Assembly: GCA_044892505.1 (NCBI GenBank)
Contig: CM097882.1
Span: 244,528,001-244,592,000 of the forward strand
Reading direction: 5' to 3'
From: Schmidtea nova
Taxonomy: Eukaryota
DNA: 64,000 nucleotides
Position numbers and translations under genes: made by a program. Of this stretch, positions 18,681 through 48,122 are shown piece after piece (within the stretch, counting starts at the first letter, position 1; every line of letters starts with the position of its first letter). Under the pieces are notes generated by a model. The model searched no databases. It was not told where the DNA came from and was given only the letters and a program-made list of their open reading frames with translations.

Positions 18681-19392
18681 TCTTACATGTTAAGTCTTAT
18701 TTTTAGGATAGGTCTTATTATGTGGGAAATACGGTACTAGTTTAGTGTTTGTTATAAGGCTAATAATATTCACTGATTCTTTTGGTGGTGATACACCTGG
18801 TCTCAAGCAATAAACGTAACTATGATACAAGTATGTGTGCACACCTACTTGTTACTCATAGTTACTTTGTTGAAATTATTAATTTTTTCATTTAGCATTT
18901 TTTTTAAATGGCCATCAGGTAAGTTTTTATTAAGATATCTTTTAATGCTTCTATTTTGATATTACAATGATATAAGATCACTATAAAAGCTTTGAAAGTT
19001 TATCTATATGCTGGTGTGTTGGTTAGATTGACAACTGAGATCCTTATGATTTTATACGTTAGGGTGATCTCGCCAACATAAAAACATTCCCCCGCTGACA
19101 CCCATGATGTATCCCTAACTACTCATCATGTTGGTGCTGTGTCAACGTTGTGAAATGACAAGGCAGGTGAGCAACCTTGCGGCTACTATTCCCTTGTTTA
19201 TTCACGGGTCCACCACTACCGTTAGAAGGTGTCTGTGGCTTTCTTTCGGTCCCACTTATGCTCTTTTCTTTTGTCCTAGGGTAATTTACATTTTAGATAT
19301 CTGCAGCTTTAAATGAACCAGGTTTTCATTACCTTTAATTCTCATACATACTTCAACAAACAAGACAAATCAAATCATTCATTTATATACAT

Positions 19393-19940
19393 TTATTTGT
19401 AGTTCAACAATACAGAGGGTCGGATTACGTTTAGTAGCTCTTGCTCAGATAGGCCACTGAGCAAGTCTACTTCGATCCCAAGGCTATCTGCGTATGCTCG
19501 TCTTTCCCTACGCTTTTTCGCTCCCAAGCGATTCCGTCTCTTTGTTCGTTTCGAGCCCTCCAGAATTATTGGGGATGTTGTGGTAGTTGTGATTGGGATG
19601 GTTTCTATTTCCGTTTGGGTACTTGTTGTCGTAGATATTGTGTCTACCCACCGATTAATGGTGCTAGCCCGGATCACTGGGCGTAATTGCTCGGTGATGC
19701 CCTCAAGTAATTCGCCAGCTCCATCTTTAGGGCTGCAATCTCTCTGGCATGTTCCTCAGCTACTCGTTCTGCCCTGTATCTAGCCTGCAGGATGGACTTA
19801 ACCTGCTCTGGGTTAAACCATGTAGTCTTAATTCGCTGGTGCTCGTCGTTGAGCTGTCTCAAGCGGTTTTCTAGGACTCGCGATCGTGCTTTATGTTCTT
19901 TGGCCTCTTGTTTGTGGTTCTTAGTTGAATGTTCGCTCAT
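19393..19940 (-). pseudogene. 3' LTR copy of the 187-aa Arg-rich ORF, frameshifted by the 16-bp deletion
   Basis: Split into ORFs 19674-20021 and 19393-19677, versus a continuous ORF in the 5' LTR. Confidence 0.8.
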
Positions 19941-20129
19941 TTCTGAAAAATGTATCATTAATCGGGTTATGTATGGTTTGTCTGTTCTCTCAGTCACTTT
20001 ATTATTAAACAGGTGTTTCACTTTTAGACCACTTCATGCTCACAAAGTCATAACAAAACCCAAAAATTGAATACATTTATTTTTTAACACACATATCCTC
20101 GTTCTTCGAATGATCGACTTCCTTGCGAT

Positions 20130-20765
20130 TTAGAGGAAGGGTCTTAATTCCTGATCGCTGGTATTCTCGTCGCGACGGATTCCATTCTCCCAATACATTT
20201 CTGGGGCTGGGTTCCAACTCAGCTTGTCTTTGTAGATAAACACCTCCCAGAGGCGAAGCTCCTTGGGCTCGGGGTGTTGTTCCACGGAAACACTTCCTGG
20301 CGCATTGGAATAAGCGAAGACTTCCTCAGTGTAGCGACACCGAGGCCTGTCTAGCAGCGTGTATCCGAGTTTGTGTAGCTCTTTTCCGGTCATCGTTCCG
20401 GTACTTAGCAGCCAGCGGGGTTGCTGTAACTCATCGCAGAATTGATAGAACCATCGGGGGTTCTCCGGCTTACTATGATCCGAGGAGAGTACCCAATCAG
20501 TATCCCCTTCCCACCGCAGCTGTAGTCCAAACGCGCAAGCTGGGGTGTTAGCCGCTAAGCTCATATGGGCCCTCATCCACCGTCGTAGGTGGCGACGTGA
20601 TATTTCTGTCACCTTTCGAGGTGCTTCGTTTTCTCCTCTGACGTTTATGATCGTATTGTGTCGGATGACGGAGCGGGTGCGCCGTTTCTTACGAAGGATG
20701 GTTTCCTCTAGCTTTATCGGGTGCGCGATCATCGACTTCCTTTGGAGATTCTCTAGTTTCACCAT
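20130..20765 (-). CDS. LTR-encoded 211-aa protein (3' LTR copy)
   Basis: Identical translation to 46123-46758; basic RKKRR motif. Confidence 0.65.
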   Translation of the reverse strand: MVKLENLQRKSMIAHPIKLEETILRKKRRTRSVIRHNTIINVRGENEAPRKVTEISRRHLRRWMRAHMSLAANTPACAFGLQLRWEGDTDWVLSSDHSKPENPRWFYQFCDELQQPRWLLSTGTMTGKELHKLGYTLLDRPRCRYTEEVFAYSNAPGSVSVEQHPEPKELRLWEVFIYKDKLSWNPAPEMYWENGIRRDENTSDQELRPFL

Positions 20766-22124
20766 AGTATTTCTAAAGAAAATGGTTGTTTGTTAACTAT
20801 GGATTCTATGGTATAACGGGCCTATTTATATCAGTCAACCCACCCGTTATACTTAATTTTCAACACTCATGTTCAACCACTCAGCTTTAACAGTTTTTAT
20901 TGATCGATAATACTATTTAATCACATTCAATCTCATCAGTCGTTTTCGATTAGTTCCTCATTTAACTAGTAATGATCATGCCATGTCGGGTAATTCTCGT
21001 AAGTTCCTGTGGTCATTGTACACTGGGGTTCATCATTTTATCGGTCCTCAATGCCTGTAATTTGTTTATCATCTCTCCTGGCGACTAAACATAGCTGACA
21101 GAGGTTATCGATTATCCTTAACCATTGATACTAGGTTCACTATGCCCGAACTCGTACGCGCTAAGGTTGACATATACCTACCCTCGTCGTTACCTAATTC
21201 ATAGGCACTAATATTATTCACTACACGTATATCCCTCGTCTAGACCTCGCCACGATATATATCTTTCCCATACCACGGGTTTCTCGTTACGCTCGTTTAC
21301 GACTACTAGTTTATGCTCGATACCCTATCATCGTGATGTATATCGTTTATATTAGATCATCGCTACCTTGATTTCGTTCACAATCATTAGGTCTTACTCG
21401 ATACCCTATGTGCATCCCCTTTTTTCCCCCCACCAAGTATTTAATAAACTTATGGTCCCGCCGCATCAGCACCTCACAACCGAAAGATTGTGTTGCGCTG
21501 AGAGGCCCCAAGAATCCGTCAGGCTGTTAGGCCTCCGGAAAACCTTATTGATTTTAATATGGTTAACAATTATGAGGGTTTATATGAATGATACAAAACA
21601 TAACTCAACCATACCTTTTATTTCCAACTGGTTTCCAATACAAGGTTGTTACAAGTTATCAGTTACAACTTGCACTCGGTAAAAATGACATTACCAAATA
21701 CTGATTTGACTTCAGTATTTATACTCAACCGGTGTTGTTGGTTAGCCAATCAGCATCGAGTATGTGTGTATGTTTGATTCATTATTTTGTGTTGCCGGCT
21801 TTTTGGTGCCTAACTCAACTCAATGATTTATTTGGTTAATCATGCGGTAAGTTTTTCTTAGTCATCAATTTATTTTATTTTATTTTTGTTTTAGGTCTTT
21901 GGTGACATCCGCCCACGCGCTGTCATATTCCAATTTTATCTGCTTCGCATGAGTGAGTTTTGAAGATTTTTGTTGTTTTGATTAATATTTTATTTCTTTT
22001 AGATGTTGCCGCCTATTTTGTTACGCTTTGGTGTTGGTAATTTATTTTGTTGTTATTCTGTATTTAATTTATTTTATTGATTGTACATTATTTTCAGATG
22101 CTGCTCGATTTGGCTGGCCCAACA

Positions 22125-22143
22125 TCACTCGGGGTCCCCTTAA
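22125..22143 (-). promoter_or_regulatory. Putative polypurine tract region
   Basis: Minus strand TTAAGGGGACCCCGAGTGA abuts the 3' LTR; only partly purine-rich. Confidence 0.45.
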
Positions 22144-22327
22144 AATTGCGTCCCGCAATTACATGCATATACCTACATCAACATACATAAAAAGTTCGTG
22201 ACAGAACTTACATGCAAAACCACATAAGGTGGTAGCTTTTATACACATTTATACAAAGTCACACATTGTCATTGTCATGTTTATATTGTTACACAGTTCA
22301 ATGTTTCTGGCTCATAGGGGTTGATTT

Positions 22328-22843
22328 TCAGGTCCTTTCACTGGTTGACTGCATTTCGTATCGGGCTTGGATTTGTCGTAGATGACTTCTCATCCTTTGT
22401 TGGGTTTTTGCTTCACATCTACACATTATCGTTTGTTGTTGTTTGAGGCTTCTGATTCGATATAGGGTATTCGTAATCACGATGATCAGGATGATTGTCA
22501 GTATTGTCATTGTGACTATTCCCACGATGATCCATCTGTTTCGGATTTCGGATTCGATTTGGGTTTGACCTTTGATTGGCTTTAGGTGATCTTGAAATGT
22601 TCTATGGATTTCTCGGATCTTCTCGATTTGATTGAATAGGGTTTGTAAGGGTTTGCGATGATCATGACTGATTCGCATTTGTCGTATTAATTGTTTCAAG
22701 TCTTCTCTGACTTCATTTAGTTGTTTTTCGATCTCCTGGGATATTTCATTTGACAGGGTTCTTTGAATTTCGGTTGTCGAATAGTTCATGATGGTTACTG
22801 TTAACATAATCGTTAGGATGGGTAGGGTTTTGAGCCAGATCAT
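22328..22843 (-). CDS. 171-aa membrane protein: N-terminal hydrophobic segment, coiled coil, TM helix
   Basis: LPILTIMLTVTIM; heptad-rich middle; WIIVGIVTMTILTIILIIVI. Confidence 0.75.
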   Translation of the reverse strand: MIWLKTLPILTIMLTVTIMNYSTTEIQRTLSNEISQEIEKQLNEVREDLKQLIRQMRISHDHRKPLQTLFNQIEKIREIHRTFQDHLKPIKGQTQIESEIRNRWIIVGIVTMTILTIILIIVITNTLYRIRSLKQQQTIMCRCEAKTQQRMRSHLRQIQARYEMQSTSERT

Positions 22844-22916
22844 TTCTGTTTATTCTACTGATTAATACCTGTTACATCGATTTGTACATTTTTACACACG
22901 GATTTTTCGCCTCTTT

Positions 22917-24077
22917 TTACACATCCGTCTCTTCTGGTTCATGGAACCCTTCGTCTTGGAGCTCCATTGGTGGTGGTGGTATAAACGGTAACCACACCAC
23001 TCTACTTCTCCACATTGCGATTTCGTCTTGATACGTTCGGGAGATTTGTATCTCTTCATCTAACAGATACTCCATATAGTCTGATTGTTCGCTCAGAGTT
23101 TCGATTTGTCTTTCCATCTCTTCCACTTTTCTCTTCAGTGTTTCTACTTCTGTTGGTTCGGTTTCTATTTCTGGGGTTTCTTTCTCTGCTTTCAGGGTTA
23201 TTATTTGTTGTTTCAGCTCCTCGTTTTCTTTCGTCAAGTTCGTTATATTTTCCTCGTAAGCTCGGTTTGATTCCGCATGCCTTTCTTTCACTGCTTTCAA
23301 CTCCATTTTCTTTTGAGTCACTACTCCTTGGTAACCATTTACATCTCTTTCCAGACTTTCTTTTTCCCTGATCAACTTTTGTCTTTCCGCTTCCTCTTTT
23401 TGTCTAATGCCTCGCATTTCTCCATTTATCATCTGTATTTGCCATTGCGTTTTCTTTAGTTCCTTTGCCTGTTCTCGAATAAATCGCTGTCGTTTTCGAC
23501 TCCATTCTTTGTTTGCTTGTTCTTGTCGTTTTCTCTGTTCTAATTCCTCTTTTAATTCGTCTATCTCTTGATACAGTTTCCAATCTTCGCTGTATGCTGT
23601 CTTTCTGATTATCTCTTTGGCCTCTTTATACACTCGTTTCGACTCCATTTTCCAATGTCTCGCTTGAGCCTTGATTGCTAGTATTTTTTCCTCCATCTTT
23701 TCCTCTTGTTTCTCCCTCTCTTCTCTTCGCGTTTTCATCATATTTTTATAATGTTCTGCTTGTTTCCTCATCAACTGATAGGTTTCCTCTATCTTCTGCC
23801 GACTTCGTACATTCGTTCCTTTTAGCTTCTCTATTTGGGCTGTCAGTTGTACTATCTCTTTATTCACTTCCTCGAGTTCTAGTTGATATAACTCCATTCG
23901 TCGTTCGCATTCTAGTTTCTCGTAGAAATTGTTTGTCATCACTTCGTGTAATTCTCTGGTTCTTTGTTCCACTTCCATTTTACATCTCCTTTCGATTTCT
24001 CTTTCTATTGTTTCTTGTTCGTTCAACATCTCGCTTCTCGTTTCATCTTCGATTACATGTTCATTTGCGTTTTCCAT
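22917..24077 (-). CDS. 386-aa long coiled-coil protein
   Basis: E/K/R/Q-rich heptad pattern throughout; element-like codon usage; proline run near the C-terminus. Confidence 0.8.
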   Translation of the reverse strand: MENANEHVIEDETRSEMLNEQETIEREIERRCKMEVEQRTRELHEVMTNNFYEKLECERRMELYQLELEEVNKEIVQLTAQIEKLKGTNVRSRQKIEETYQLMRKQAEHYKNMMKTRREEREKQEEKMEEKILAIKAQARHWKMESKRVYKEAKEIIRKTAYSEDWKLYQEIDELKEELEQRKRQEQANKEWSRKRQRFIREQAKELKKTQWQIQMINGEMRGIRQKEEAERQKLIREKESLERDVNGYQGVVTQKKMELKAVKERHAESNRAYEENITNLTKENEELKQQIITLKAEKETPEIETEPTEVETLKRKVEEMERQIETLSEQSDYMEYLLDEEIQISRTYQDEIAMWRSRVVWLPFIPPPPMELQDEGFHEPEETDV

Positions 24078-24166
24078 TCTGTAATTTACAAATTTACACT
24101 TGTTATACTACACGTTTATTGTTGTTGTCGATTTTTACACTTTATTTACAGGGTCGTTCATTCTGA

Positions 24167-25579
24167 CTACTCTAACCATCCTTTCGTTGACTTCGTGTTC
24201 ATCACTGTTGTACTTGCTTTCCTTTCGATCTCCAACTCTACATATAAGTTGTCATCGTACAACATTTCCCACATTGTTTGGTGTGGTATGAATTTTGGTT
24301 CTCCAGTCGCTAATGAACATTCTGTGGTTGGTCTTTTGTAAGCTTCGTGCTTACTATCAATTTTGAATACTCTCGCTATTGTTTCTTTCGAGTTTCTCAC
24401 TCTCATTATAGCCTTTGTTTCTAGTGGCCATTCTAATATGTCGTCGTAACCACCTTTACACAACGCAAAGAATAATGACACATGCGTTTCCTTTCCTGAT
24501 CCATCTCCATTTGGATAAATTCTCATCCGGACTTTGTATCCATTTTTCCACAGATAGAATGGTGGACTTGTTACCGACACTTGACTTCCTGCTTTTGCTG
24601 CTGCGAACTTTTCGTTGAACTTCTTGATTTTCCATACATATGGTGCGACCGGTAAACTCTCGATATCCTCTGCATCTCGCACCCACATTTGGTGTCGTAC
24701 ATTTACTTCCTTTACTAGCGTCTCTATGACTTTGATTTTCTCCATCATTTTCTCTCTGGTGAGCTCGAATTGTTCTCTTGTTTCCAGTAATAACTCCGTC
24801 ATTATCCTCTGAGATTCGATTTCTTTTTCCAGCTTCTGTATGGTTTGTTCCATTCCGTTTAAATTTTCTGTTAGCATCTCTGCGTGTTGTACCGTCTCTG
24901 TTTCTAAATGCTCTTTCATTTCTTTGCTCGTTTTCTTTACTAGACATCCTTGTTTACTCCATACGCACTTCCTTGGTCTTGATTCGCACCGTTCCCAATG
25001 TTCTCTCACCATCACTTCTTCTCCGGTTCCGCAATTACTTGGACAAATTCCTCGGAATTTTCCGCACACTTTCTCTTCTGCTACGTTGAGATGTTCTGTT
25101 TCGATTACTTCTCTCGTCTCTCTTTGTTTGCAGTATTGACACTCTACTATCTCTGCTTTGCACTCATCCTTGTGCTTTTTTGACTGCTTGATGGTTATCG
25201 TCTGTTGACACTTTTCACATATCGCTTTCTTGTTTTCACATTTCCCCAGATGCTGTCTTAGCTCGATTATTTGTCCTTTCCATTCACAGGGTTGGTTTAT
25301 ACATTCTGTTTTTATTTTCCAGATCTCCTTTTGTATTGCTTTGTCTGGTTTCGTCTCGTTGATTAGTAGTTTATCGACACACTCTGGACACTTTCTTGTC
25401 TCACTTTCACTGATTATTTGCAATATACACTTGGTGCACATCCTGCATCCACATTCGGTTTGTCTCGGTTTCAACAGTAAATTTCTACACTTTACACACG
25501 TCACATTTACTCCCCATTGTCGATTTTCTCCTCTCAGAATTTCGATTGTTTGGTAATCTGCTTCACTTTCTGCTCTCAT
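24167..25579 (-). CDS. TRAF-family protein: RING, TRAF zinc fingers, coiled coil, MATH domain
   Basis: CVKC..KPRQTECGCRMCTKC..CPEC; PDKAIQKEI..C..CEWKG; YVWKIKKF; SPPFY..GYKVRMRIYPNGDGSGKETHVSLFF..KGGYDDILEWP. Confidence 0.95.
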   Translation of the reverse strand: MRAESEADYQTIEILRGENRQWGVNVTCVKCRNLLLKPRQTECGCRMCTKCILQIISESETRKCPECVDKLLINETKPDKAIQKEIWKIKTECINQPCEWKGQIIELRQHLGKCENKKAICEKCQQTITIKQSKKHKDECKAEIVECQYCKQRETREVIETEHLNVAEEKVCGKFRGICPSNCGTGEEVMVREHWERCESRPRKCVWSKQGCLVKKTSKEMKEHLETETVQHAEMLTENLNGMEQTIQKLEKEIESQRIMTELLLETREQFELTREKMMEKIKVIETLVKEVNVRHQMWVRDAEDIESLPVAPYVWKIKKFNEKFAAAKAGSQVSVTSPPFYLWKNGYKVRMRIYPNGDGSGKETHVSLFFALCKGGYDDILEWPLETKAIMRVRNSKETIARVFKIDSKHEAYKRPTTECSLATGEPKFIPHQTMWEMLYDDNLYVELEIERKASTTVMNTKSTKGWLE

Positions 25580-25668
25580 TCTACAACGATATTTACATCA
25601 ATTTCCCCATATTTTTGATTTTTCTGGTTCTTTATTTACACGTATTTACACAATTTTCCGCTTATTCA

Positions 25669-26019
25669 CTATACATCCTCAGTTGAATCTGGCTCTGGAT
25701 ACACGTCTATCTCATTTACAATCCAGCTCGTCCAACTATCTGGTATCTCTTCCTCTTCATGTCTCGTTAATCGGTCAATTTCCTCTGCTTGCCAGTTGTT
25801 CACTTCATTCAATGTTCGGTTCTCGTTCTGTAATTCGTTTATCTGTAGTTGTTGAATCTCGATTTTGTTCATTGCTTCGAAATTACAGTTGTAACTCTCG
25901 GTTAATAATTGCGTTTTGGCCGTCAACTGGCTCTGTAATTCGTTTATTGTTCTGGCTAGCAGGTCACATTGCACTTTCCATCTTGTCATCGTTGACATCT
26001 CGATATTTTCTTGGTTCAT
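25669..26019 (-). CDS. 116-aa coiled-coil protein
   Basis: Heptad pattern with acidic tail; sits in the tightly packed 3' cassette. Confidence 0.65.
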   Translation of the reverse strand: MNQENIEMSTMTRWKVQCDLLARTINELQSQLTAKTQLLTESYNCNFEAMNKIEIQQLQINELQNENRTLNEVNNWQAEEIDRLTRHEEEEIPDSWTSWIVNEIDVYPEPDSTEDV

Positions 26020-26142
26020 TGTTTTTCTAGATTATATACATCATTCTCTTTTTTCTGTTTTTATGTTTTATAATATTTATACCCATACGTATACGGTTAT
26101 GCATTGGTTTTTACACTATTATTTACACTCATATTCCACCCT

Positions 26143-29100
26143 CTATACAATCACCACTGGTTTTCCTTCGTACAGTTCTTCGTCCTCGATCTGTACCCAC
26201 ATCTCTTCGTGTTTTGATCGTCTTTTCAGTTCCTCTCGTACTTCTTTTGATAGTTTTATGTTGTAGTTCGTGACCTTTACGTCTGGCCATTTTACTGCTA
26301 TGGTCTTATTTCTCATGCCATATCTCCAACATACTATCATGATCGTTATCAGTGGTATACACGCTATGAATACTCCCATGCTGATTAATCCCATTACTGT
26401 TTTTCCAATGCTCATTCTTGGAGTCTCACTTTGGTTTATCATCACGCCATATTGACCTTTCCATTCTGCTTCCCATTGTTCATATTGTTGTTGTCTCCGT
26501 CTGACTTCTTCGATCACTTTCTCTGGTTCCCATTTTTCTTGTCGATTTGGTATTGTTTCTTCCTTCTCGTTTTGTTCTCTCTTCTGACTCAATTCTCGGA
26601 ATTCTAACTTGCGGGTTCCCCCTTTTATCGTTATGTTCCTTGGCGTGTAATAGGTTTCGCACCTTTCTTGTTGATTTCCTTGTGCGTCTACTTCTTCGAT
26701 TGCACACACTTCGTATTCTGCGTTTGTTTTCAACCTCCTCATTTCTACCTCGATTGTTTCCCTTTTGTCATTTGATGTCTTTTGACAGTTTCGTGGAGAC
26801 TCTCTCATACTGTTTGGCATTAATGTCCAACAGATTTCTAGGACCTTTTTATGGATCTTCCATATTATCAGGGTTGTTGACTCTGGTTCGTTTTCTATTG
26901 TCGTCCTTTCCGTTGTTGCCTGTTGAGTTCTCTGACTGTTGGTTGTCGTGGTCCTTCTTGACTTTCTTTTCCTCTGTCGACTTCTTCCCATTTCAATCGT
27001 TCTCGTTCCGTTAATTTGCTCTGGCGTCTGGTACAGTTTGCACTCCAGGCTTCTTTGTATTATTTCTCTTATTCTTCGGATTACGCAAATTTCGTAGGCT
27101 TGTCCGACTTCGAATCCATTTAGTTGAAACGGGATTCCTCGTTCTCTCGTTCTGCATTGCGGTATTATGTTGTTGGTCGGTATTCCGATGTATTTTCTCC
27201 AACACATCCCAATTGTTCTCCGACCAATGTTTTTTATCTCCACGGTTACTACTTCATTCGCAATCGTTTCTTGATCTTGTTTCTTTCTTTTTGGGAACTC
27301 AATTATCTCCTTTGCTTGGAACACTTTACACTCGCTTGTTCCTGGTCTGTTTCCGTTTGCTGCTTTTTCCATGAGGCATAGTTCACATGTTTTCTCTGTT
27401 TCCATTTCAGTTATCTCGATTTCCTCATTTGTCTCTGCCTCTCGACTTTCTCTTGTTTCGCTGATTCCAATTACTTCATTGTTTCGTCCCCAACATCTTC
27501 CATTCGTTGTTCGTTGATCTTGGATGTTTACTAACGTCATCACGCTGATATCTATGTCCTCCATGATTCTCTTAATGAGGATTAATATTAATGCTACACA
27601 TATCAATTCTGGTTGGAATGTTAATTTGCCCGCTGGATTTTTGGTTATTCTTTCTTTCTCTGTTCGGTTTCTGATTCCCTCTTCTGCTTCGGTTTGATTC
27701 TTCCCTTTCTCTGATTCCACTTCTGTTCTTCTCGTCGTCTCTTTGCTTCTTTTCTCAATCCATTTCTGTATTTTCAGCGCTTCTGTTGCTTTGTATAATT
27801 GACATGCAGTTACTTGAGGTGCTTTTGGTTCTCCTCTCTGCTTTATTGCGCATATTATGTATGACTTTTCCTTCTCCAATCCTTTGATTTGGATGACGTC
27901 TCGCTTCAGATCTGACAATATACACTTCAGCGTATCGTTTTTCTTCAGGTTTTCTTTCCAGCATATTCTTTCATATACTTCATTTCCTCTGATTATTTCC
28001 AGCGTGACGTATTGTTTCTTGGCTTCTCCTTGCCCGATGATTGTTATCAATATCGCAATACACAACATTTCTGGTCTCAAAAGTAGACTTCCTGTTCGTT
28101 TTCCATAGTTCGCATGTTCGTCTTCTGTTCCACTGTTTTCTCGTTCTTCGGCTTCCCCTTTCTTGTCGTTTCTCGTTGGCTTCGGTTCTTCTTGTCTTTC
28201 TTTTTCATTGTCTTCGTTGTTATCTTTGTTGTCTTCTTTCTTGCTGTCACTTTTGTCGTCGAAATCTCTGTAACCACCCCCTGGTCCTTTTGAAATGTCG
28301 TCCTCGACATTAATTTCTTCAATCAATCTTTCATACGCTTGAACCGCGAGTGTGCTAGACTCGAATTCCCGTATTTCCATATCCTTGGATGGTTCTATGT
28401 CTTTTAGTCTACTTTGCTTGATTGTTTCTTTGGCATTTGCCCACTCCTTCACATACTTTCTGAACAAGTCTTTCCATCTTCCTATTCGTTCCTGTTCCTT
28501 TGAGTTGTTCGTAAATTTCAAATCTCTTCTCTTCAAGAATTCTTCTACTATCTCTGGCTTTTTGTGTCTCAATAACGCGCTTCTGATACACCAATTCTGA
28601 TTTTGTTCCATATGGTCATTGATCTTGAACGCTGGTTCCTTGGTGACTGGATTCACCCATGTTAGTAATGCTCTTGTTTTCTCTATGTCGTGTATCATTA
28701 CTGTTAGACTGAAGTTCTTTACGTTATTCGCCAGGTATTCGATATCGTCTTGCTTCTTGATGGACTTTATGAACTTGATCATCTCGAAGTTGTTCCACTG
28801 TATTGCGATGTCTATGATGGAATTATTCTTTCCATTTTTCCCTTCGATTTTTGCTCCTGCTTCGTATAACTCGTTTAGCACTTTGCAGTTCGTCTTCTTC
28901 CTCGCTGCGATTATCATGATTGTGTCTCCGTTATCATCAGCCGTGTTCATGTCTGCTTCGCATTTGACCATCGCTTTCGTTATTTCCAGCACTTCGTTTT
29001 CTTTCTTTCGACGTAATGCCCAGTGTATCGGTAGTCTTCCATCCTTTGATAAAAGGAATGCTACTGGCATTTGGTTCTTGATCGTTTCTATGTCACTCTC

Positions 29101-41043: not shown

Positions 41044-41917
41044 CCCGATTCCACTATCTTGGAATGCTGTACTAGTTTTCTTTACTTCTAGTTCACCACT
41101 TGTTTCTGAATTCGACTCTTCTTCTTCGCTACTCTCTGTTTCGTTATCTCTTGATTCGCTTCTTGTTCTGTTTTCCCTGACTAGTTCACTGTCTATCGTC
41201 TCTACTTCGTTTTGTACTTCTAGATCTTCTGGGGTTTCTTCTTGATTCTCTTTATTACTCGAATTATCGCTGATCTCTACTTGTTTGTTCTTTTGTTGCT
41301 TAGGCTTGTTACCTGTTCTTGTCCTTTTCGCTGCTTTTCTTTCTGCTTCCGTTAAGATTGGTATTATACCTGATCTTGTTTCTCGTCCCTCAATTTTGTC
41401 TATTCCTCAACTGCTTATATTCTCAACTGCTTTTCTACTCCGCTTTTGCTTTGCTTCTTCTTTGATTTGTTTCTTTTGATTGCTCTGACTGCTAGATTGC
41501 TTTGAATTGCTTGATTGATTTGTTTCCTTAAAACAAATAATCACTTACACGATACGTCCCCGTTATCGTGTTTCTCGTCCCTCTCACGGGTGTAGTCATA
41601 ATTCATGAAGATCCCCATTTTTCAAATTTCCCTTGATTTTAAGTCTATTTAAATTATCTATGCAGTCGCATCAATTATCTATTCTTTATCAAATACACCA
41701 ATTACTTTTCCCCAGTTCCCCAATTACTTTGTCGCTCAGCGCTCTTATTATCCCCTTTACTTTTCTCAGGCTTCTCTGGCTCTGAGTTCAAATTTCCCCT
41801 TATCTGTCGACTACTCTGTTTCTCGACTATTCGCTTTATCTCCTATTCACACTACGTTTACTACTTCATTTCAATTCTCATCTCTACTCACCTTTAATTC
41901 GACTGACATCTCTCGTT

Positions 41918-42384
41918 GGCCTGCTGGGCTTTCCAGTCAGCGCCTTTCATCTCACCTTTTATCTCGACTTTATTACTCTCAACATCACTCATTATCTCAT
42001 TAGCCTGCTGGGTTTTCCAGTCAGCGCTTTTAATCTCACCTTTTATTGTTATCTCGTTACTCTCGACCACGACTGTCGTTTCATTAGCCTGCTGGGTTTT
42101 CCAGTCAGCGCTCTTGTTATCCTCCATTTATCTCTTTACTGTCGACTTTTAACTGCTCTTGACTCCGATGATCATCACTTTTGACCTGCTGGGTCTTCCA
42201 GTCAGCGTCCTCACTTTCACCACTTTATTATTACTCACTTTTATTCTCTCGATCTTTCCTGATCGTTATCATTGACCTGCTGGGTTTTCCAGCTAGCGTC
42301 TTTACCACTTTACCTGTCTTAACAAACCGGTTTTATTTTACTCTCTTCGAATCTCATGGTCTGCTGGTTTTTCCAGTCAGCACC
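41918..42384 (-). ncRNA. Array of six 27-nt bulged stem-loops (putative cis-acting RNA element)
   Basis: Copies at 41918, 42002, 42086, 42183, 42274 and 42358; consensus NNN-G-CTG-A-CTGG-(5-nt loop)-CCAG-CAG-NNN with covarying basal stems. Confidence 0.7.
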
Positions 42385-42710
42385 CTTCACTTACTCACTT
42401 TACTTTGCTACTCCTCCTTGTATGCATACTTTAACATCATTAGGCCACATAATCAGCTTTACTCGCATTTATCAATACCCAGGTGCGCACCTTCAACTCT
42501 CTCATTATTACCTCGGTTTCTTTCAACCCTTATTCCTCATTATTCGCTATTCATTTTCACTATTCATCATTTATCCTCATTATTATTTATTCATCTCCAT
42601 TATCGCTTGTTGATCTTCACTATCCGGATAGTTTTATACTTTATTTAGTCCTCATCTGCCTCACTTCGTCGTCTTTCTCGTGGGCTTTTACTCAATATTT
42701 TATTTCGAAC

Positions 42711-43270
42711 GAGAACTATGCTCACAGCTGAGAACTATGCTCACTAACGAGAACTATGCTCAATGACGAGAACTATGCTCAATGACGAGAACTATGCTCA
42801 CTGACGAGAACTATGCTCACTGACGAGAACTATGCTCACTGACGAGAACTATGCTCACTGACGAGAACTATGCTCACTAACGAGAACTATGCTCACTGAC
42901 GAGAACTATGCTCACTGACGAGAACTATGCTCACGGGCAAAACATGGTTGTTATGAGGGTTTTGCTTACTGATGGAAACTCTTTGCTCCGGGGACTATGT
43001 TCCCCGATGAGAACTATGCTCACTGATGGTGACTACAGGAATTATGTTTCCTGATGAGAACTACGCTCACTACGATGACTATGCTTATTGATGAGAACTA
43101 CGCTCACTGATGAGGACTATGTTCGCTGGTCTTGTGTTTATTAATGAGAACTCTGCTCACTACGAGAACTATGCTCACTATGATGTTGTGTTTTTATGAC
43201 GAGACCTATGCTCACTAGGATGTTATTTTTATGACGAGACCTATGCTCACTATGAGACCTATGCTCACGA
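42711..43270. repeat. 19-bp tandem array (GAGAACTATGCTCACTGAC): 12 copies at 42711-42934, degenerate copies to about 43270
   Basis: Read directly. Confidence 0.95.
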
Positions 43271-43967: not shown

Positions 43968-44426
43968 TTACAAGTACACTGTTATTCTTTCGGATACGGT
44001 AAGGTTGCACATAGGACATCGTTCATTTATTTTACAGTCATTACAGAATCGAAAATGCCCACATGGCAACAACATTATCTGTATTTTGTTCATTTCACAG
44101 ATATAACACGTCAGATATTGTCTCGTATGTTCTGTTGTTATTCTTATCCATTCATCGTGTTTTGTTGTTAACTGTTGTTCTAGCCTGTGGCACTCGATAT
44201 TCATCTCAGGGTTGCTTAATCTTTCTCTATACCATTGATATCGTGTTGTTGTATCCACTGTTATCTTATTCTCGCTTATGCTCATCATCATGTCGGCTCT
44301 TTCTGTGTTGTTTGTCGGTTCGTGATATTCTCCTACCTCGAGTCGTCTTAACTTCCTCATTATTGTCTCCACTGTTTCGTTGTTTGTTTCGAAAAACGTT
44401 TGCATTTCTTTTATTTTGTTCTCCAT
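43968..44426 (-). CDS. 152-aa protein with C-terminal IAP-type C3HC4 RING (putative E3 ligase)
   Basis: CYICEMNKIQIMLLPCGHFRFCNDC..CPMCNLTVSERITVYL at the extreme C-terminus; no BIR domain. Confidence 0.9.
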   Translation of the reverse strand: MENKIKEMQTFFETNNETVETIMRKLRRLEVGEYHEPTNNTERADMMMSISENKITVDTTTRYQWYRERLSNPEMNIECHRLEQQLTTKHDEWIRITTEHTRQYLTCYICEMNKIQIMLLPCGHFRFCNDCKINERCPMCNLTVSERITVYL

Positions 44427-44960: not shown

Positions 44961-44979
44961 AATCCCGGCTGAGCCCCCA
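44961..44979 (-). promoter_or_regulatory. Primer-binding site, tRNA-Pro type
   Basis: TGGGGGCTCAGCCGGGATT, 6 nt after the 5' LTR; two mismatches to the MLV Pro PBS TGGGGGCTCGTCCGGGAT. Confidence 0.85.
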
Positions 44980-45369
44980 AATTTATGCTGGTGTGTTGGT
45001 TAGATTGACAACTGAGATCCTTATGATTTTATACGTTAGGGTGATCTCGCCAACATAAAAACATTCCCCCGCTGACACCCATGATGTATCCCTAACTACT
45101 CATCATGTTGGTGCTGTGTCAACGTTGTGAAATGACAAGGCAGGTGAGCAACCTTTCGGCTACTATTCCCTTGTTTATTCACGGGTCCACCACTACCGTT
45201 AGAAGGTGTCTGTGGCTTTCTTTCGGTCCCACTTATGCTCTTTTCTTTTGTCCTAGGGTAATTTACATTTTAGATATCTGCAGCTTTAAATGAACCAGGT
45301 TTTCATTACCTTTAATTCTCATACATACTTCAACAAACAAGACAAATCAAATCATTCATTTATATACAT

Positions 45370-45933
45370 TTATTTGTAGTTCAACAATACAGAGGGTCGG
45401 ATTACGTTTAGTAGCTCTTGCTCAGATAGGCCACTGAGCAAGTCTACTTCGATCCCAAGGCTATCTGCGTATGCTCGTCTTTCCCTACGCTTTTTCGCTC
45501 CCAAGCGATTCCGTCTCTTTGTTCGTTTCGAGCCCTCCAGAATTATTGGGGATGTTGTGGTAGTTGTGATTGGGATGGTTTCTATTTCCGTTTGGGTACT
45601 TGTTGTCGTAGATATTGTGTCTACCCACCGATTAAAGGTGCTAGCCCGGATCACTGGGCGTAATTGCTCGGTGATGAACTCCTTGGTTGATGCCCTCAAG
45701 TAATTCGCCAGCTCCATCTTTAGGGCTGCAATCTCTCTGGCATGTTCCTCAGCTACTCGTTCTGCCCTGTATCTAGCCTGCAGGATGGACTTAACCTGCT
45801 CTGGGTTAAACCATGTAGTCTTAATTCGCTGGTGCTCGTCGTTGAGCTGTCTCAAGCGGTTTTCTAGGACTCGCGATCGTGCTTTATGTTCTTTGGCCTC
45901 TTGTTTGTGGTTCTTAGTTGAATGTTCGCTCAT
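45370..45933 (-). CDS. LTR-encoded 187-aa protein (coiled coil, Thr-rich linker, Arg-rich motif, Leu-rich tail)
   Basis: Start chosen at TTTTTCAG|AAATG rather than the tracked GTG at 46014; KRTKRRNRLGAKKRRERRA; stop overlaps AATAAA. Confidence 0.7.
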   Translation of the reverse strand: MSEHSTKNHKQEAKEHKARSRVLENRLRQLNDEHQRIKTTWFNPEQVKSILQARYRAERVAEEHAREIAALKMELANYLRASTKEFITEQLRPVIRASTFNRWVDTISTTTSTQTEIETIPITTTTTSPIILEGSKRTKRRNRLGAKKRRERRAYADSLGIEVDLLSGLSEQELLNVIRPSVLLNYK

Positions 45934-46122
45934 TTCTGAAAAATGTATCATTAATCGGGTTATGTATGGTTTGTCTGTTCTCTCAGTCACTTTATTATTA
46001 AACAGGTGTTTCACTTTTAGACCACTTCATGCTCACAAAGTCATAACAAAACCCAAAAATTGAATACATTTATTTTTTAACACACATATCCTCGTTCTTC
46101 GAATGATCGACTTCCTTGCGAT

Positions 46123-46758
46123 TTAGAGGAAGGGTCTTAATTCCTGATCGCTGGTATTCTCGTCGCGACGGATTCCATTCTCCCAATACATTTCTGGGGC
46201 TGGGTTCCAACTCAGCTTGTCTTTGTAGATAAACACCTCCCAGAGGCGAAGCTCCTTGGGCTCGGGGTGTTGTTCCACGGAAACACTTCCTGGCGCATTG
46301 GAATAAGCGAAGACTTCCTCAGTGTAGCGACACCGAGGCCTGTCTAGCAGCGTGTATCCGAGTTTGTGTAGCTCTTTTCCGGTCATCGTTCCGGTACTTA
46401 GCAGCCAGCGGGGTTGCTGTAACTCATCGCAGAATTGATAGAACCATCGGGGGTTCTCCGGCTTACTATGATCCGAGGAGAGTACCCAATCAGTATCCCC
46501 TTCCCACCGCAGCTGTAGTCCAAACGCGCAAGCTGGGGTGTTAGCCGCTAAGCTCATATGGGCCCTCATCCACCGTCGTAGGTGGCGACGTGATATTTCT
46601 GTCACCTTTCGAGGTGCTTCGTTTTCTCCTCTGACGTTTATGATCGTATTGTGTCGGATGACGGAGCGGGTGCGCCGTTTCTTACGAAGGATGGTTTCCT
46701 CTAGCTTTATCGGGTGCGCGATCATCGACTTCCTTTGGAGATTCTCTAGTTTCACCAT
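46123..46758 (-). CDS. LTR-encoded 211-aa protein of unknown function
   Basis: Open in both LTRs; TTTTCTTTAG 7 nt upstream, TATAAATA 58 nt upstream, AATAAA about 50 nt downstream. Confidence 0.65.
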   Translation of the reverse strand: MVKLENLQRKSMIAHPIKLEETILRKKRRTRSVIRHNTIINVRGENEAPRKVTEISRRHLRRWMRAHMSLAANTPACAFGLQLRWEGDTDWVLSSDHSKPENPRWFYQFCDELQQPRWLLSTGTMTGKELHKLGYTLLDRPRCRYTEEVFAYSNAPGSVSVEQHPEPKELRLWEVFIYKDKLSWNPAPEMYWENGIRRDENTSDQELRPFL

Positions 46759-47674
46759 AGTATTTCTAAAGAAAATGGTTGTTTGTTAACTATGGATTCT
46801 ATGGTATAACGGGCCTATTTATATCAGTCAACCCACCCGTTATACTTAATTTTCAACACTCATGTTCAACCACTCAGCTTTAACAGTTTTTATTGATCGA
46901 TAATACTATTTAATCACATTCAATCTCATCAGTCGTTTTCGATTAGTTCCTCATTTAACTAGTAATGATCATGCCATGTCGGGTAATTCTCGTAAGTTCC
47001 TGTGGTCATTGTACACTGGGGTTCATCATTTTATCGGTCCTCAATGCCTGTAATTTGTTTATCATCTCTCCTGGCGACTAAACATAGCTGACAGAGGTTA
47101 TCGATTATCCTTAACCATTGATACTAGGTTCACTATGCCCGAACTCGTACGCGCTAAGGTTGACATATACCTACCCTCGTCGTTACCTAATTCATAGGCA
47201 CTAATATTATTCACTACACGTATATCCCTCGTCTAGACCTCGCCACGATATATATCTTTCCCATACCACGGGTTTCTCGTTACGCTCGTTTACGACTACT
47301 AGTTTATGCTCGATACCCTATCATCGTGATGTATATCGTTTATATTAGATCATCGCTACCTTGATTTCGTTCACAATCATTAGGTCTTACTCGATACCCT
47401 ATGTGCATCCCCTTTTTTCCCCCCACCAAGTATTTAATAAACTTATGGTCCCGCCGCATCAGCACCTCACAACCGAAAGATTGTGTTGCGCTGAGAGGCC
47501 CCAAGAATCCGTCAGGCTGTTAGGCCTCCGGAAAACCTTATTGATTTTAATATGGTTAACAATTATGAGGGTTTATATGAATGATACAAAACATAACTCA
47601 ACCATACCTTTTATTTCCAACTGGTTTCCAATACAAGGTTGTTAGAAGTTATCAGTTACAACTTGCACTCGGTA

Positions 47675-47750
47675 AAAATGACATTACCAAATACTGATTT
47701 GACTTCAGTATTTATACTCAACCGGTGTTGTTGGTTAGCCAATCAGCATC
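47675..47750 (-). promoter_or_regulatory. Candidate LTR core promoter
   Basis: TATAAATA on minus (47709-47716), CCAAT box AGCCAATCAG (47737-47746), Inr-like TCAGT/TCATT downstream. Confidence 0.45.
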
Positions 47751-48122
47751 GAGTATGTGTGTATGTTTGATTCATTATTTTGTGTTGCCGGCTTTTTGGT
47801 GCCTAACTCAACTCAATGATTTATTTGGTTAATCATGCGGTAAGTTTTTCTTAGTCATCAATTTATTTTATTTTATTTTTGTTTTAGGTCTTTGGTGACA
47901 TCCGCCCACGCGCTGTCATATTCCAATTTTATCTGCTTCGCATGAGTGAGTTTTGAAGATTTTTGTTGTTTTGATTAATATTTTATTTCTTTTAGATGTT
48001 GCCGCCTATTTTGTTACGCTTTGGTGTTGGTAATTTATTTTGTTGTTATTCTGTATTTAATTTATTTTATTGATTGTACATTATTTTCAGATGCTGCTCG
48101 ATTTGGCTGGCCCAACATATAT

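What the first reader, a model, noticed from the sequence alone, without database searches (positions are those of the whole stretch)
19009..48117. 29-kb enveloped retrovirus-like Gypsy element carrying a cell-death / NF-kB / ubiquitin toolkit
Seen: a complete element with near-identical LTRs, TSD, PBS and intact catalytic motifs, plus Bcl-2-like, IAP-type RING, TRAF, ankyrin, ubiquitin-like, FN3/TM and glycoprotein modules. Established: Bcl-2, IAP RING ligases, TRAFs and ankyrin (IkB-like) proteins act in apoptosis and TNF/NF-kB signalling, and large DNA viruses capture these same classes. Inference: the element behaves like a complex endogenous virus that keeps its host cell alive while spreading. 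Caveat: from memory, giant planarian Gypsy elements (Burro) were reported with BCL2/MATH-type cargo, so size and some cargo may not be new; the full set with env may be.
Basis: partly seen in the sequence, partly recalled or inferred. Interest (0 to 1): 0.95.

Follow-up and report, generated by a model that had tools for sequence, protein, structure and literature searches.

The report
Intact giant Burro-type planarian retroelement
This is a young, apparently intact 29-kb copy of the already published "Burro" family of giant Gypsy-like, virus-like retroelements of planarian flatworms; it carries a viral fusion glycoprotein and cell-death and ubiquitin signalling domains, so it is striking but not new.

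Summary
Window 19009-48117 (minus strand) is a complete 29,109-bp LTR element.
- Its LTRs are 3.1 kb and differ by 3 mismatches and one indel.
- It has TG..CA ends, a TATA target duplication and an 18-nt tRNA-type primer-binding site.
- One unbroken 4,966-codon polyprotein reads gag, a long charged region, a Bcl-2-like domain, in-frame env, PR, RT, RNase H, IN, ankyrin repeats and a C-terminal membrane module.
- Separate ORFs encode an IAP-type RING protein, a complete TRAF, two coiled-coil proteins and a small membrane protein.

How the cargo claims fared:
- Firmly supported: RING, TRAF, ankyrin and env. Env looks like a chuvirus-type class III fusion glycoprotein.
- Moderately supported: the Bcl-2-like domain.
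- Not supported by any test here: ubiquitin-like, FN3, BIR and dUTPase folds.

The architecture, the in-frame env and the idea of an integrated provirus that meddles with apoptosis and ubiquitination were all published for Burro/GYPSM1 (Arkhipova & Yushenova 2019, citing Jurka 2007 and Grohme 2018). The verdict is therefore already known, with modest interest.

Possibly new details are a repeated junction motif between the 3' accessory ORFs, four Cys/Trp repeats at the polyprotein C-terminus, and cargo-free metagenomic relatives that share the in-frame env.

The parts
19005..19008 (.). Target-site duplication, TATA (left)
19009..22124 (-). 3' LTR in element orientation, 3,116 nt, TG..CA ends
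20130..20765 (-). 211-aa ORF inside the LTR, with an identical copy at 46123-46758. It has no Pfam match. A second LTR ORF of 214 aa (45370-46014) is whole only in the 5' LTR; in the 3' LTR the single indel splits it (outer bounds 19393-20021).
22135..22141 (-). Short purine tract (PPT-like) just upstream of the 3' LTR
22328..22843 (-). ORF171, a small type-I-like membrane protein: N-terminal hydrophobic leader, helical heptad region, TM segment and basic tail. It has a weak, sub-threshold Pfam GP41 match (E 1.5e-3).
22917..24077 (-). ORF386, a charged coiled-coil protein with no domain match. Its C-terminus resembles a PDZ ligand.
24167..25579 (-). TRAF-like ORF, 470 aa: RING at 28-67, TRAF zinc fingers at about 170-224, a coiled coil, and MATH/TRAF-C at 314-451
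   Evidence: MATH 8e-27; TRAF5/3/2 TRAF-C 6e-27; TRAF6 RING-ZnF 1e-12
25669..26019 (-). ORF116, a small coiled-coil ORF
22889..26128 (-). Span that holds 7 sense-strand copies of GTGTAAAWA. All 7 lie in the four 73-123-nt gaps between the 3' ORFs.
   Evidence: 9 in the window against 2.7 expected; 7 of the 9 are here
26143..41043 (-). Polyprotein ORF, 4,966 codons, no stop codon and no frameshift
40144..41043 (-). Gag (aa 1-300): Retrotrans_gag plus three CCHC knuckles
36682..40143 (-). Charged or unassigned region (aa 301-1454) with no significant domain match. It is homologous to UniParc protein P0008, which has a MATH domain inserted here.
36214..36681 (-). Bcl-2-like all-helical domain (aa 1455-1610) with a BH2-like motif
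36079..36126 (-). Internal hydrophobic signal-like segment (aa 1640-1655) directly before env. Its position is conserved in all relatives.
34306..36078 (-). Env (aa 1656-2246): ectodomain plus TM anchor. Pfam Monjiviricetes_fusion; a class III fusion glycoprotein of chuvirus type.
33457..33729 (-). Aspartic protease (DTGA)
32317..32793 (-). Reverse transcriptase (YIDD)
31741..32130 (-). RNase H
30844..31416 (-). Integrase (HHCC zinc domain; D3292, D3352, E3388)
28654..30066 (-). Two blocks of ankyrin repeats (aa about 3660-4130)
26146..28092 (-). C-terminal module (aa 4318-4966): three hydrophobic segments and four roughly 90-aa repeats with invariant Cys and Trp. Cys and N-glycosylation sites are enriched. 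Fold unknown.
41911..43255 (.). Leader region with tandem repeats: 84-nt units x2.7, 19-nt units x11.9, and others
43968..44426 (-). Upstream ORF, 152 aa, with a C-terminal IAP-type RING and no BIR domain
   Evidence: zf-C3HC4_3 6.9e-9; cIAP2 RING 1.7e-7
44962..44979 (-). Primer-binding site, 18 nt, starts TGG; its complement ends in CCA like a tRNA 3' end
44986..48117 (-). 5' LTR in element orientation, 3,132 nt
48118..48121 (.). Target-site duplication, TATA (right)
4..9063 (+). Neighbouring second Burro-like copy of a different family (73-75% nt identity). It covers the equivalent of aa about 1281-3769 and is degraded and truncated at both ends. It is not part of the element.

Best explanation
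The region is one full-length, very recently inserted copy of a Burro-type giant Ty3/Gypsy-like endogenous retrovirus-like element. These elements have been published for dugesiid planarians.

SHOWN BY THE SEQUENCE.
- Two near-identical 3.1-kb LTRs, a 4-bp target duplication and a tRNA-type PBS.
- One unbroken 4,966-aa polyprotein with all catalytic motifs.
- Six further open accessory ORFs, one upstream and five downstream.

INFERRED MECHANISM.
1. A genome-length RNA is made from the 5' LTR.
2. The polyprotein is translated as a membrane-threaded precursor. Gag, the charged region and the Bcl-2-like domain stay cytosolic.
3. An internal hydrophobic segment directly after the Bcl-2-like domain acts as the signal for the env ectodomain, which enters the ER lumen.
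4. The TM anchor of env returns the chain to the cytosol for PR, RT, RNase H, IN and the ankyrin repeats.
5. Further hydrophobic segments thread the C-terminal Cys/Trp repeats through the membrane.
6. The element's aspartic protease, and probably host signal peptidase, cut the precursor.
7. Reverse transcription is primed by a tRNA, and integrase makes the TATA duplication.

ENV. It is a class III fusion protein of the chuvirus and mononegavirus type. It was already embedded in the polyprotein in a wider, cargo-free clade of elements.

CARGO. It comprises the Bcl-2-like domain, an IAP-type RING E3, a full TRAF and the ankyrin repeats. It was most likely taken from cellular genes. The element probably uses it to bend host cell-death, TRAF/NF-kB-type and ubiquitin pathways in the expressing cell. 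This last step is inference only.
For: STRUCTURE AND YOUTH. The LTRs differ by 3 mismatches and 1 indel over 3.1 kb, with TG..CA ends, a TSD and a PBS.

CODING INTEGRITY. The 14.9-kb ORF has no stop and keeps the DTGA, YIDD, HHCC and D,D35E motifs and three CCHC knuckles.

DOMAINS..

ENV.
- Pfam PF24664 scores 228 bits against a cut-off of 27.
- Foldseek against viral models is led by chuvirus and chu-like glycoproteins (E down to 7e-21), followed by rhabdovirus G, nyavirus G and herpesvirus gB.
- Against the PDB it is led by herpesvirus gB, at E 5e-6.
- The signal-like segment and the TM anchor keep their positions in all five relatives.

SELECTION. Comparison with the diverged second copy in the window gives pN 0.05-0.21 against pS 0.64-0.90 in every segment. 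The Bcl-2-like domain has pN 0.17 and pS 0.82, and env has pN 0.10-0.14.

BCL-2 FOLD..

FAMILY. The published description of Burro/GYPSM1 matches in several respects (PMC6431247):
- total length above 30 kb with a roughly 4,900-aa ORF1;
- three CCHC knuckles in S. mediterranea;
- BCL2, MATH/TRAF and ankyrin cargo;
- env in frame between BCL2 and PR;
- tandem repeats;
- accessory ORFs that in other family members exist as subdomains of the polyprotein.

That last point is seen directly here. P0008 carries a MATH domain in frame exactly where this polyprotein has none, while this element encodes a separate TRAF ORF.

EXPRESSION. BURRO1 RNA is expressed and is de-repressed when the PIWI protein SMEDWI-2 is lost (PMC8532177).
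Against: - No Burro reference sequence or planarian genome could be compared, so family and host rest on architecture and on AT-rich, transposon-rich flanks.
- Both structure models have low confidence (pLDDT 48 and 50). The Bcl-2 and class III assignments therefore lean on sequence-assisted Foldseek ranking, not on good models.
- Several motifs published for Burro-1 were not found here: BIR, dUTPase-like and Ubi2/SUMO-like.
- The env ectodomain has only one N-glycosylation sequon.
- No classical late-domain motif is present.
- Membrane topology, processing and every cargo function are inferred, not shown.
Confidence: 0.85

Rival explanations
1. The element is intact, but env is a retained relic. 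The family spreads only inside cells, as an ordinary retrotransposon in stem or germ cells. The cargo serves intracellular replication rather than cell-to-cell spread.
For: - The literature reports thousands of genomic copies, which requires heritable integrations.
- The env ectodomain has only one N-glycosylation sequon, and its only two furin-like R-x-K/R-R motifs lie in positions that no test here ties to cleavage.
- No late-domain motif is present.
- No close relative turned up in the viral or metagenome collections.
Against: - Env is under strong purifying selection between two diverged families in this window: pN 0.10-0.14 against pS about 0.75.
- Its signal and TM segments are kept in distant relatives.
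- Class III fusion proteins do not generally need furin cleavage (established knowledge).
Confidence: 0.25
2. The RING, TRAF, ankyrin and Bcl-2-like modules do not primarily control cell death. They act as ubiquitin-ligase adaptors and scaffolds that remove host restriction or silencing factors, or that traffic and assemble element proteins.
For: - Two of the modules are RING E3-type proteins.
- The ankyrin region lacks an IkB-type degron.
- The RING protein has no BIR domain, so it is not a canonical caspase-binding IAP.
- Burro is a PIWI target.
Against: - The Bcl-2-like domain's best structural and sequence matches are pro-survival Bcl-xL and Bcl-2.
- The TRAF-C domain is closest to TRAF2/3/5, which act in receptor signalling.
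- Neither reading was tested functionally.
Confidence: 0.2
3. The cargo domains are neutral passengers: host gene fragments swept in by recombination or nested insertion. They look intact only because this copy is young.
For: The copy is very young, so its intact ORFs alone do not prove selection. Cargo position varies between relatives.
Against: - The Bcl-2-like domain and the linker before it show pN far below pS against a copy whose synonymous sites are saturated.
- The region around the MATH site is conserved at 31-37% identity in P0008.
- All modules lie in one frame with uniform composition.
- The cargo recurs across Burro families and planarian genera in the literature.
Confidence: 0.07
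4. The 29-kb unit is an assembly chimera or a nest of several elements, not one element.
For: Planarian genomes are hard to assemble because of Burro elements. The window is packed with transposons.
Against: - A single 14.9-kb ORF is collinear with an independent second copy over 7.5 kb.
- GC content and skew are uniform from 20 to 48 kb.
- The matching LTRs are flanked by a perfect 4-bp duplication.
- There is no N run inside the element.
Confidence: 0.02

Closest known systems
Burro-1 to -4 / GYPSM1, giant Gypsy-like LTR elements of Schmidtea mediterranea, and the Burro-like element of Girardia (Dugesia) tigrina (Jurka 2007; Grohme et al. 2018; Arkhipova & Yushenova 2019, PMC6431247)
   Same: - Total size near 30 kb with roughly 3-kb LTRs and an ORF1 of about 4,900-5,100 aa.
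- Gag with three CCHC knuckles.
- A BCL2-like domain directly before an in-frame env, followed by PR-RT-RH-IN and ankyrin repeats.
- MATH/TRAF and RING cargo, tandem repeats and accessory ORFs.
- The provirus and 'tinkerer with apoptosis and ubiquitination' hypothesis.
   Different: - ORF1 here is 4,966 aa (Burro-1: 4,873; G. tigrina: 5,140).
- MATH is not in ORF1. It belongs to a complete TRAF encoded downstream; in Burro-1 it is in ORF1, and in G. tigrina it is in an upstream ORF.
- BIR, dUTPase-like and Ubi2/SUMO-like motifs were not detected here.
- Sequence identity to the named families could not be measured.
Unnamed metagenomic elements P0001-P0004 (ENA assemblies ERZ2272167, ERZ2272577, ERZ25039515)
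   Same: - Gag, env (PF24664), PR, RT, RH and IN all lie in one reading frame.
- Env keeps its own signal-like segment and TM anchor.
- Identity is 35-37% in env and 42-44% in pol.
- One of them has LTR-like repeats 15.3 kb apart.
   Different: - They are about 15-17 kb long.
- Pfam finds no Bcl-2-like, TRAF, RING or ankyrin cargo.
- They have two or three protease domains and a conserved downstream RNase_T-type exonuclease ORF.
- Their host is unknown.
Anakin, a mosquito LTR retrotransposon that captured a chuvirus glycoprotein (Dezordi et al. 2020, PMC7642597; PMC10084718; PMC12440569)
   Same: A reverse-transcribing element that carries a Jingchuvirales-type glycoprotein as its env (here).
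   Different: It has an arthropod host and a different LTR superfamily (BEL/Pao, from my own knowledge). It has no giant polyprotein and no cell-death or ubiquitin cargo. Here env sits inside the gag-pol frame.
Errantiviruses (Drosophila gypsy and relatives)
   Same: Ty3/Gypsy elements that gained an env gene from another virus group.
   Different: Their env is a separate ORF of baculovirus F type. Here it is an in-frame class III protein. The 2019 paper reported an HHpred link to gypsy Env. My searches instead point to the G/gB class.
Large DNA viruses that encode Bcl-2, IAP/RING and ankyrin proteins (herpes-, pox-, baculo- and asfarviruses; established knowledge)
   Same: The same classes of host-derived regulators of cell death and of NF-kB and ubiquitin signalling.
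   Different: These are DNA viruses with separate genes. Here the modules ride on a reverse-transcribing element and are partly fused into its polyprotein.

Membership tests
Ty3/Gypsy LTR retrotransposon (Metaviridae-like) | Direct LTRs with TG..CA ends and a short target-site duplication | tested here: met
Ty3/Gypsy LTR retrotransposon (Metaviridae-like) | Domain order PR-RT-RNase H-IN with intact catalytic motifs, and a gag with CCHC knuckles | tested here: met
Ty3/Gypsy LTR retrotransposon (Metaviridae-like) | tRNA-type PBS next to the 5' LTR and a PPT next to the 3' LTR | tested here: met
   The 18-nt PBS is clear. The PPT is only a 7-nt purine run. The priming tRNA was not identified; the window holds no tRNA gene.
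Burro family (giant planarian Gypsy) | Total length near or above 30 kb, with an ORF1 of about 4.9-5.1 thousand codons | tested here: met
   29,109 bp and 4,966 codons, against the description
Burro family (giant planarian Gypsy) | Env in frame between a BCL2-like domain and PR | tested here: met
   against
Burro family (giant planarian Gypsy) | MATH/TRAF, RING and ankyrin cargo | tested here: met
   TRAF is a separate downstream ORF, a variation the literature allows.
Burro family (giant planarian Gypsy) | BIR, dUTPase-like and Ubi2/SUMO-like motifs, as reported for Burro-1 | tested here: not met
   No Pfam hit at E<=1-10 and no BIR Cys/His signature on the coding strand. The published calls came from HHpred and CDD, which are more sensitive.
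Burro family (giant planarian Gypsy) | Sequence relatedness to the Burro-1 to -4 references, and a dugesiid planarian host | not testable with these tools
   No planarian genome or repeat library is on hand. The protein collections hold only distant relatives.
Bcl-2 family | Helical bundle of about 150 aa with BH1 and BH2 motifs | tested here: inconclusive
   There is no Pfam hit. The BH2-like motif matches Bcl-2/Bcl-xL at E about 1. Foldseek's top 50 are nearly all Bcl-xL/Bcl-2, but the model pLDDT is 48 and no E is below 0.001. No canonical BH1 NWGR motif is present.
TRAF family | N-terminal RING, TRAF zinc fingers, coiled coil and C-terminal MATH/TRAF-C | tested here: met
IAP family | At least one BIR domain | tested here: not met
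   Only the C-terminal IAP-type RING is present. It works like an IAP RING ligase but is not an IAP.
Class III viral fusion glycoproteins (rhabdovirus G, herpesvirus gB, gp64; Pfam PF24664 Monjiviricetes_fusion) | Family profile match above threshold, with signal sequence, ectodomain and a single C-terminal TM anchor | tested here: met
   228 bits against a cut-off of 27; hydrophobic segments
Class III viral fusion glycoproteins (rhabdovirus G, herpesvirus gB, gp64; Pfam PF24664 Monjiviricetes_fusion) | Class III fold | tested here: inconclusive
   Foldseek hits to chuvirus-type G, rhabdovirus G and gB are significant (E 7e-21 and 5e-6). But the model pLDDT is 50 and TM-scores are 0.1-0.2.
Fibronectin type III domain | FN3 profile or fold match | tested here: not met
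   No Pfam or PDB-sequence hit, even with a four-repeat profile.
Ubiquitin-like (beta-grasp) domain | Ubiquitin, SUMO or Rad60-SLD profile match | tested here: not met
   The only trace is a sub-threshold RA_2 hit (E 0.063).
IkB-like ankyrin proteins | Ankyrin repeat block plus a DSGxxS phospho-degron | tested here: not met
   Ankyrin repeats are present, but no degron motif is.

The most novel reading that the evidence does not exclude
Beyond the published anatomy, this Burro-type element may be a retroelement with several membrane proteins and an organised 3' accessory-gene cassette.
- The polyprotein would be a polytopic membrane precursor, comparable in logic to a flavivirus polyprotein.
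- It would expose both a class III env and a second lumenal module, the four Cys/Trp repeats with their own hydrophobic segments and C-terminal TM anchor.
- A separately encoded small type-I membrane protein with a heptad region would add a third membrane component.
- The five downstream ORFs would be expressed through a repeated junction signal, GTGTAAAWA, which occurs 7 times in four short gaps.

The papers I could read describe none of these points.
Probability: 0.2. Interest if true: 0.55.

Novelty: already known. Interest (0 to 1): 0.3.

Why it matters
Burro elements are among the largest LTR retroelements known. They fuse a negative-strand-RNA-virus glycoprotein and host-type cell-death and ubiquitin regulators into one reverse-transcribing genome. 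They fill a large part of planarian genomes and are controlled by PIWI proteins in a stem-cell model organism.

An intact, very young copy such as this one is a good specimen for descriptive work on how such a polyprotein is organised. The discovery itself was published in 2007-2019, including size, cargo, in-frame env and the provirus hypothesis. The finding therefore adds a well-annotated example and a few details, not a new kind of system.

Tried and rejected
SEARCHES THAT LED NOWHERE.
- Exact look-up of the TRAF ORF: not on record.
- Word-indexed protein search with the env piece alone and with the env alignment: nothing.
- HMMER search of 1.8 billion representatives with aa 850-1660: a single hit, P0008. 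No deep alignment could therefore be built for the Bcl-2-like, ubiquitin-like or C-terminal regions.
- phmmer against PDB sequences found nothing useful. The queries were env, aa 1280-1700, aa 780-1300, the C-terminal region and a candidate ubiquitin-like piece.
- Four-repeat profile against the PDB: no FN3 or Ig hit.
- Scans of metagenome and viral contigs with the pol region: no relative. The env alignment was too diverse for that tool.
- Rfam and tRNA scans of the window: nothing.
- Grohme et al. 2018 is not held, and the BURRO1 probe table is not held. No published Burro sequence could be matched.

IDEAS REJECTED.
- An IAP proper: there is no BIR domain.
- An IkB mimic: there is no degron.
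- dUTPase between PR and RT: no hit at E<=10.
- Assembly chimera: see the rival explanations.

1. An early script printed match bounds for the degraded neighbouring copy, and these indirectly bracket its frame changes.
2. The related claims rest on tool hits.
3. Consensus lines printed by the alignment tool were not used.

Full report
1. WHAT IS THERE

- A self-comparison finds one pair of long direct repeats, at 19009-22124 and 44986-48117 (3,116 and 3,132 nt). They differ by three mismatches and one 16-nt indel.
- Both repeats begin TG and end CA. The four bases TATA flank the element on each side.
- All long ORFs lie on the minus strand, so 44986-48117 is the 5' LTR.
- Six bases inside the 5' LTR lies an 18-nt stretch that starts TGG. 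Its complement ends in CCA, like a tRNA 3' end. A short purine run precedes the 3' LTR.
- GC content (0.39-0.42) and strand skews are uniform across the element and drop sharply to 0.14-0.30 in the flanks.
- There is no N run inside the element. The only one is at 58431-58563 and was left alone.

2. CODING CONTENT

The centre is a 4,966-codon ORF without a stop, at 26143-41043. Pfam places domains in this order:

| Domain | Residues | Note |
|---|---|---|
| Retrotrans_gag | 50-145 | |
| CCHC knuckles | 240-290 | three knuckles |
| Monjiviricetes_fusion | best stretch 1912-2253 | viral fusion glycoprotein, 228 bits against a cut-off of 27; N-terminal part further upstream |
| Retroviral protease | 2439-2529 | |
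| Reverse transcriptase | 2751-2909 | |
| RNase H | 2972-3101 | |
| Integrase zinc and core domains | 3210-3400 | |
| Ankyrin repeats | about 3660-4130 | two blocks |

The catalytic signatures are all present: DTGA, YIDD, HHCC and D-D-35-E.

Upstream, between the PBS and gag, lie two features:
- a 152-aa ORF whose C-terminal RING is closest to the RINGs of cIAP2, cIAP1 and XIAP;
- a 1.3-kb stretch of tandem repeats.

Downstream lie five tightly spaced ORFs:
- a 116-aa coiled-coil ORF;
- a 470-aa protein with the full TRAF layout: RING, TRAF zinc fingers, coiled coil and MATH. Its TRAF-C domain matches TRAF5/3/2 at E 6e-27, and its N-terminus matches TRAF6 RING-ZnF at 1e-12;
- a 386-aa coiled-coil ORF;
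- a 171-aa ORF with leader, heptad region, TM segment and basic tail, with a weak GP41 match below threshold;
- a 211-aa ORF within the LTR itself, with no known domain.

3. THE DISPUTED MODULES

Bcl-2.
- Pfam finds nothing in aa 1440-1660, even at E<=10.
- The stretch is 65% identical to the second copy in the window.
- A profile of the two sequences, searched against PDB sequences, returns 21 hits at E<=10. Nineteen are Bcl-2 or Bcl-xL, all aligned at the BH2 motif, but at E about 1.
- An AlphaFold model is all-helical but poor (pLDDT 48).
- Foldseek with that model nevertheless returns Bcl-xL/Bcl-2 chains in 49 of the top 50 places, aligned over 130-157 columns, at E 0.05-0.3.
- I read this as moderate support. 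It agrees with the published HHpred call.

Ubiquitin-like and FN3.
- No ubiquitin, SUMO or FN3 match appeared in any Pfam or PDB-sequence search. These searches included a profile of the four C-terminal repeats and a profile with P0008.
- The C-terminal 650 residues do hold three hydrophobic segments and four weakly similar repeats of about 90 aa, with invariant Thr, Cys, Trp, Cys and Cys columns. Cys and N-glycosylation sequons are enriched there.

BIR and dUTPase-like motifs, reported for Burro-1, were not found.

4. ENV

- A hydrophobic segment (aa 1640-1655) follows the Bcl-2-like domain by about 30 residues and opens the env ectodomain. A strong TM segment (aa 2224-2242) closes it.
- A seven-row alignment gave a weak model (pLDDT 50).
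- Foldseek against predicted viral structures is clearly led by glycoproteins of chuviruses and related arthropod and crustacean negative-strand viruses (E 7e-21 to 1e-16). Rhabdovirus G, nyavirus G and herpesvirus gB follow.
- Against the PDB, herpesvirus gB leads at E 5e-6, with 70 matches at E<=0.001.
- Env is therefore a class III fusion protein of Jingchuvirales/Mononegavirales type. TM-scores are low, so this assignment rests on local 3Di-plus-sequence similarity and on the Pfam score.

5. RELATIVES AND SELECTION

- The protein collections hold no close planarian entry.
- The nearest full-length relatives, P0001-P0004 from ENA assemblies, are 2,855-3,771 aa. They have gag, env, PR, RT, RH and IN in one frame, with 35-37% identity in env and 42-44% in pol. 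Pfam finds no cell-death or ubiquitin cargo in them.
- The signal-like and TM segments of env sit in the same places in these relatives. The in-frame env therefore predates the cargo.
- P0008, a UniParc entry, matches aa 565-1166. It carries a MATH domain inserted exactly where this polyprotein has none. This element instead has a free-standing TRAF ORF.
- The window's left edge (4-9063, plus strand) holds a second Burro-like copy at 73-75% nucleotide identity. It is cut at both ends and broken by at least two frame changes, six in-frame stops and one insertion of about 1.5 kb.
- I compared its open segments, as they stand, with the main copy. This gave pN 0.05-0.21 against pS 0.64-0.90 in every segment. 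For the Bcl-2-like domain the values are 0.17 and 0.82, and for env 0.10-0.14 and about 0.75. Both were kept as proteins while the two lineages diverged.

6. HOW IT MOST LIKELY WORKS

Shown: an integration-competent architecture and full coding capacity.

Inferred:
- transcription from the 5' LTR;
- translation of a membrane-threaded polyprotein in which gag through Bcl-2-like stays cytosolic, env enters the ER lumen through its internal signal, PR through ankyrin returns to the cytosol, and the C-terminal repeats are threaded again;
- cleavage by the element's protease and probably by signal peptidase;
- tRNA-primed reverse transcription, and integration with a 4-bp duplication.

The cargo probably lets the element modulate cell death and TRAF- and ubiquitin-dependent signalling in the expressing cell. 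This last step is plausible but untested. An alternative is that the E3-type modules target host restriction or silencing factors.

7. COMPARISON WITH WHAT IS KNOWN

- Arkhipova and Yushenova (2019, PMC6431247) summarise Jurka (2007) and Grohme et al. (2018) and add their own HHpred work. Their account covers:
  - Burro/GYPSM1 elements of Schmidtea mediterranea exceed 30 kb and have a 4,873-aa ORF1;
  - ORF1 has a gag with three CCHC knuckles;
  - it carries MATH/TRAF, Ubi2/SUMO-like, BCL2-like, BIR and ankyrin motifs;
  - a dUTPase-like motif lies between PR and RT;
  - env lies in frame between BCL2 and PR, with hits to mononegavirus fusion glycoproteins;
  - accessory ORFs may alternatively exist as polyprotein subdomains;
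  - they propose that Burro elements are integrated proviruses that meddle with apoptosis and ubiquitination.
- BURRO1 RNA is expressed in differentiated cells and rises when SMEDWI-2 is lost (PMC8532177).
- Capture of a chuvirus glycoprotein by an LTR element is also known from mosquitoes: Anakin (PMC7642597, PMC12440569).
- The finding is thus a member of a described family. Whether it equals one of Burro-1 to -4 could not be measured.

8. VERDICT

- Two listed folds are unsupported.
- Novelty: already known. Interest 0.3, mostly for the minor, possibly new details listed under Noticed in passing.

Noticed in passing
window 22889-26128, minus strand: The 9-mer GTGTAAAWA occurs 9 times in the 64-kb window (2.7 expected). 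Seven of the 9 lie on the sense strand inside the four 73-123-nt gaps between the polyprotein and the downstream ORFs, usually two per gap. It may be a gene-junction, RNA-processing or RNA-binding-protein signal. It is absent from the sense strand of the distant relatives.
   Followed up: partly
window 4-9063, plus strand: A second Burro-like copy of a different family (73-75% nt identity) covers Bcl-2-like through ankyrin. It is truncated at both ends and has at least 2 frame changes, 6 in-frame stops and one insertion of about 1.5 kb.
   Followed up: partly
window 59440-61750, minus strand: A mosaic of gene fragments sits here: an HSP90 piece (Pfam 1.1e-11), ubiquitin pieces (8.8e-7) and duplicated coiled-coil ORFs. 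It is not similar to the element. It may be a chimeric pseudogene or cargo of another mobile element.
   Followed up: partly
window 9245-9658 (+), 13175-15724 (-), 16951-17837 (-): The neighbourhood is a transposon graveyard. It holds an HTH transposase fragment, an 849-aa hAT-type transposase ORF (DUF4371 plus hAT dimerisation domain) and a Tc5/pogo-type DDE transposase in pieces.
   Followed up: no
window 26146-28092, minus strand (polyprotein aa 4318-4966): Four roughly 90-aa repeats have invariant Thr, Cys, Trp, Cys and Cys columns. Each of the first two is preceded by a hydrophobic segment, and the set ends in a strong TM anchor and a short tail. N-glycosylation sequons are about three times denser than elsewhere in the polyprotein. 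The papers I read do not mention this module.
   Followed up: partly
window 22328-22843 and 22917-24077, 25669-26019, minus strand: ORF171 looks like a miniature type-I membrane protein with a heptad region (weak GP41 hit). ORF116 and ORF386 both end in an acidic Ser/Thr-x-Val type C-terminus, which resembles a class I PDZ-binding motif.
   Followed up: no
window 20130-20765 and 46123-46758; 45370-46014: The 3.1-kb LTRs contain sense-strand ORFs: a 211-aa ORF in both LTRs, and a 214-aa ORF that is whole only in the 5' LTR. Neither has a domain match. LTR-encoded accessory proteins are known from some retroviruses, so this may deserve a look across copies.
   Followed up: no
L001, L002, L003, L004 (ENA metagenome assemblies): The cargo-free relatives have the same in-frame env. 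They carry 2-3 aspartic protease domains and a conserved downstream ORF with an RNase_T-type exonuclease domain. One cluster recurs as contigs of about 16.4-16.9 kb in at least 15 assemblies. L001 has 123-nt direct repeats 15.3 kb apart and bacterial-type ABC-transporter gene fragments nearby.
   Followed up: partly
polyprotein aa 1069-1084 (window about 37792-37839, minus strand): This is the exact point where the relative P0008 carries an in-frame MATH domain of about 215 residues. This element has none there and instead encodes a whole TRAF downstream. It is a clear example of a module that moves between polyprotein and accessory ORF.
   Followed up: yes
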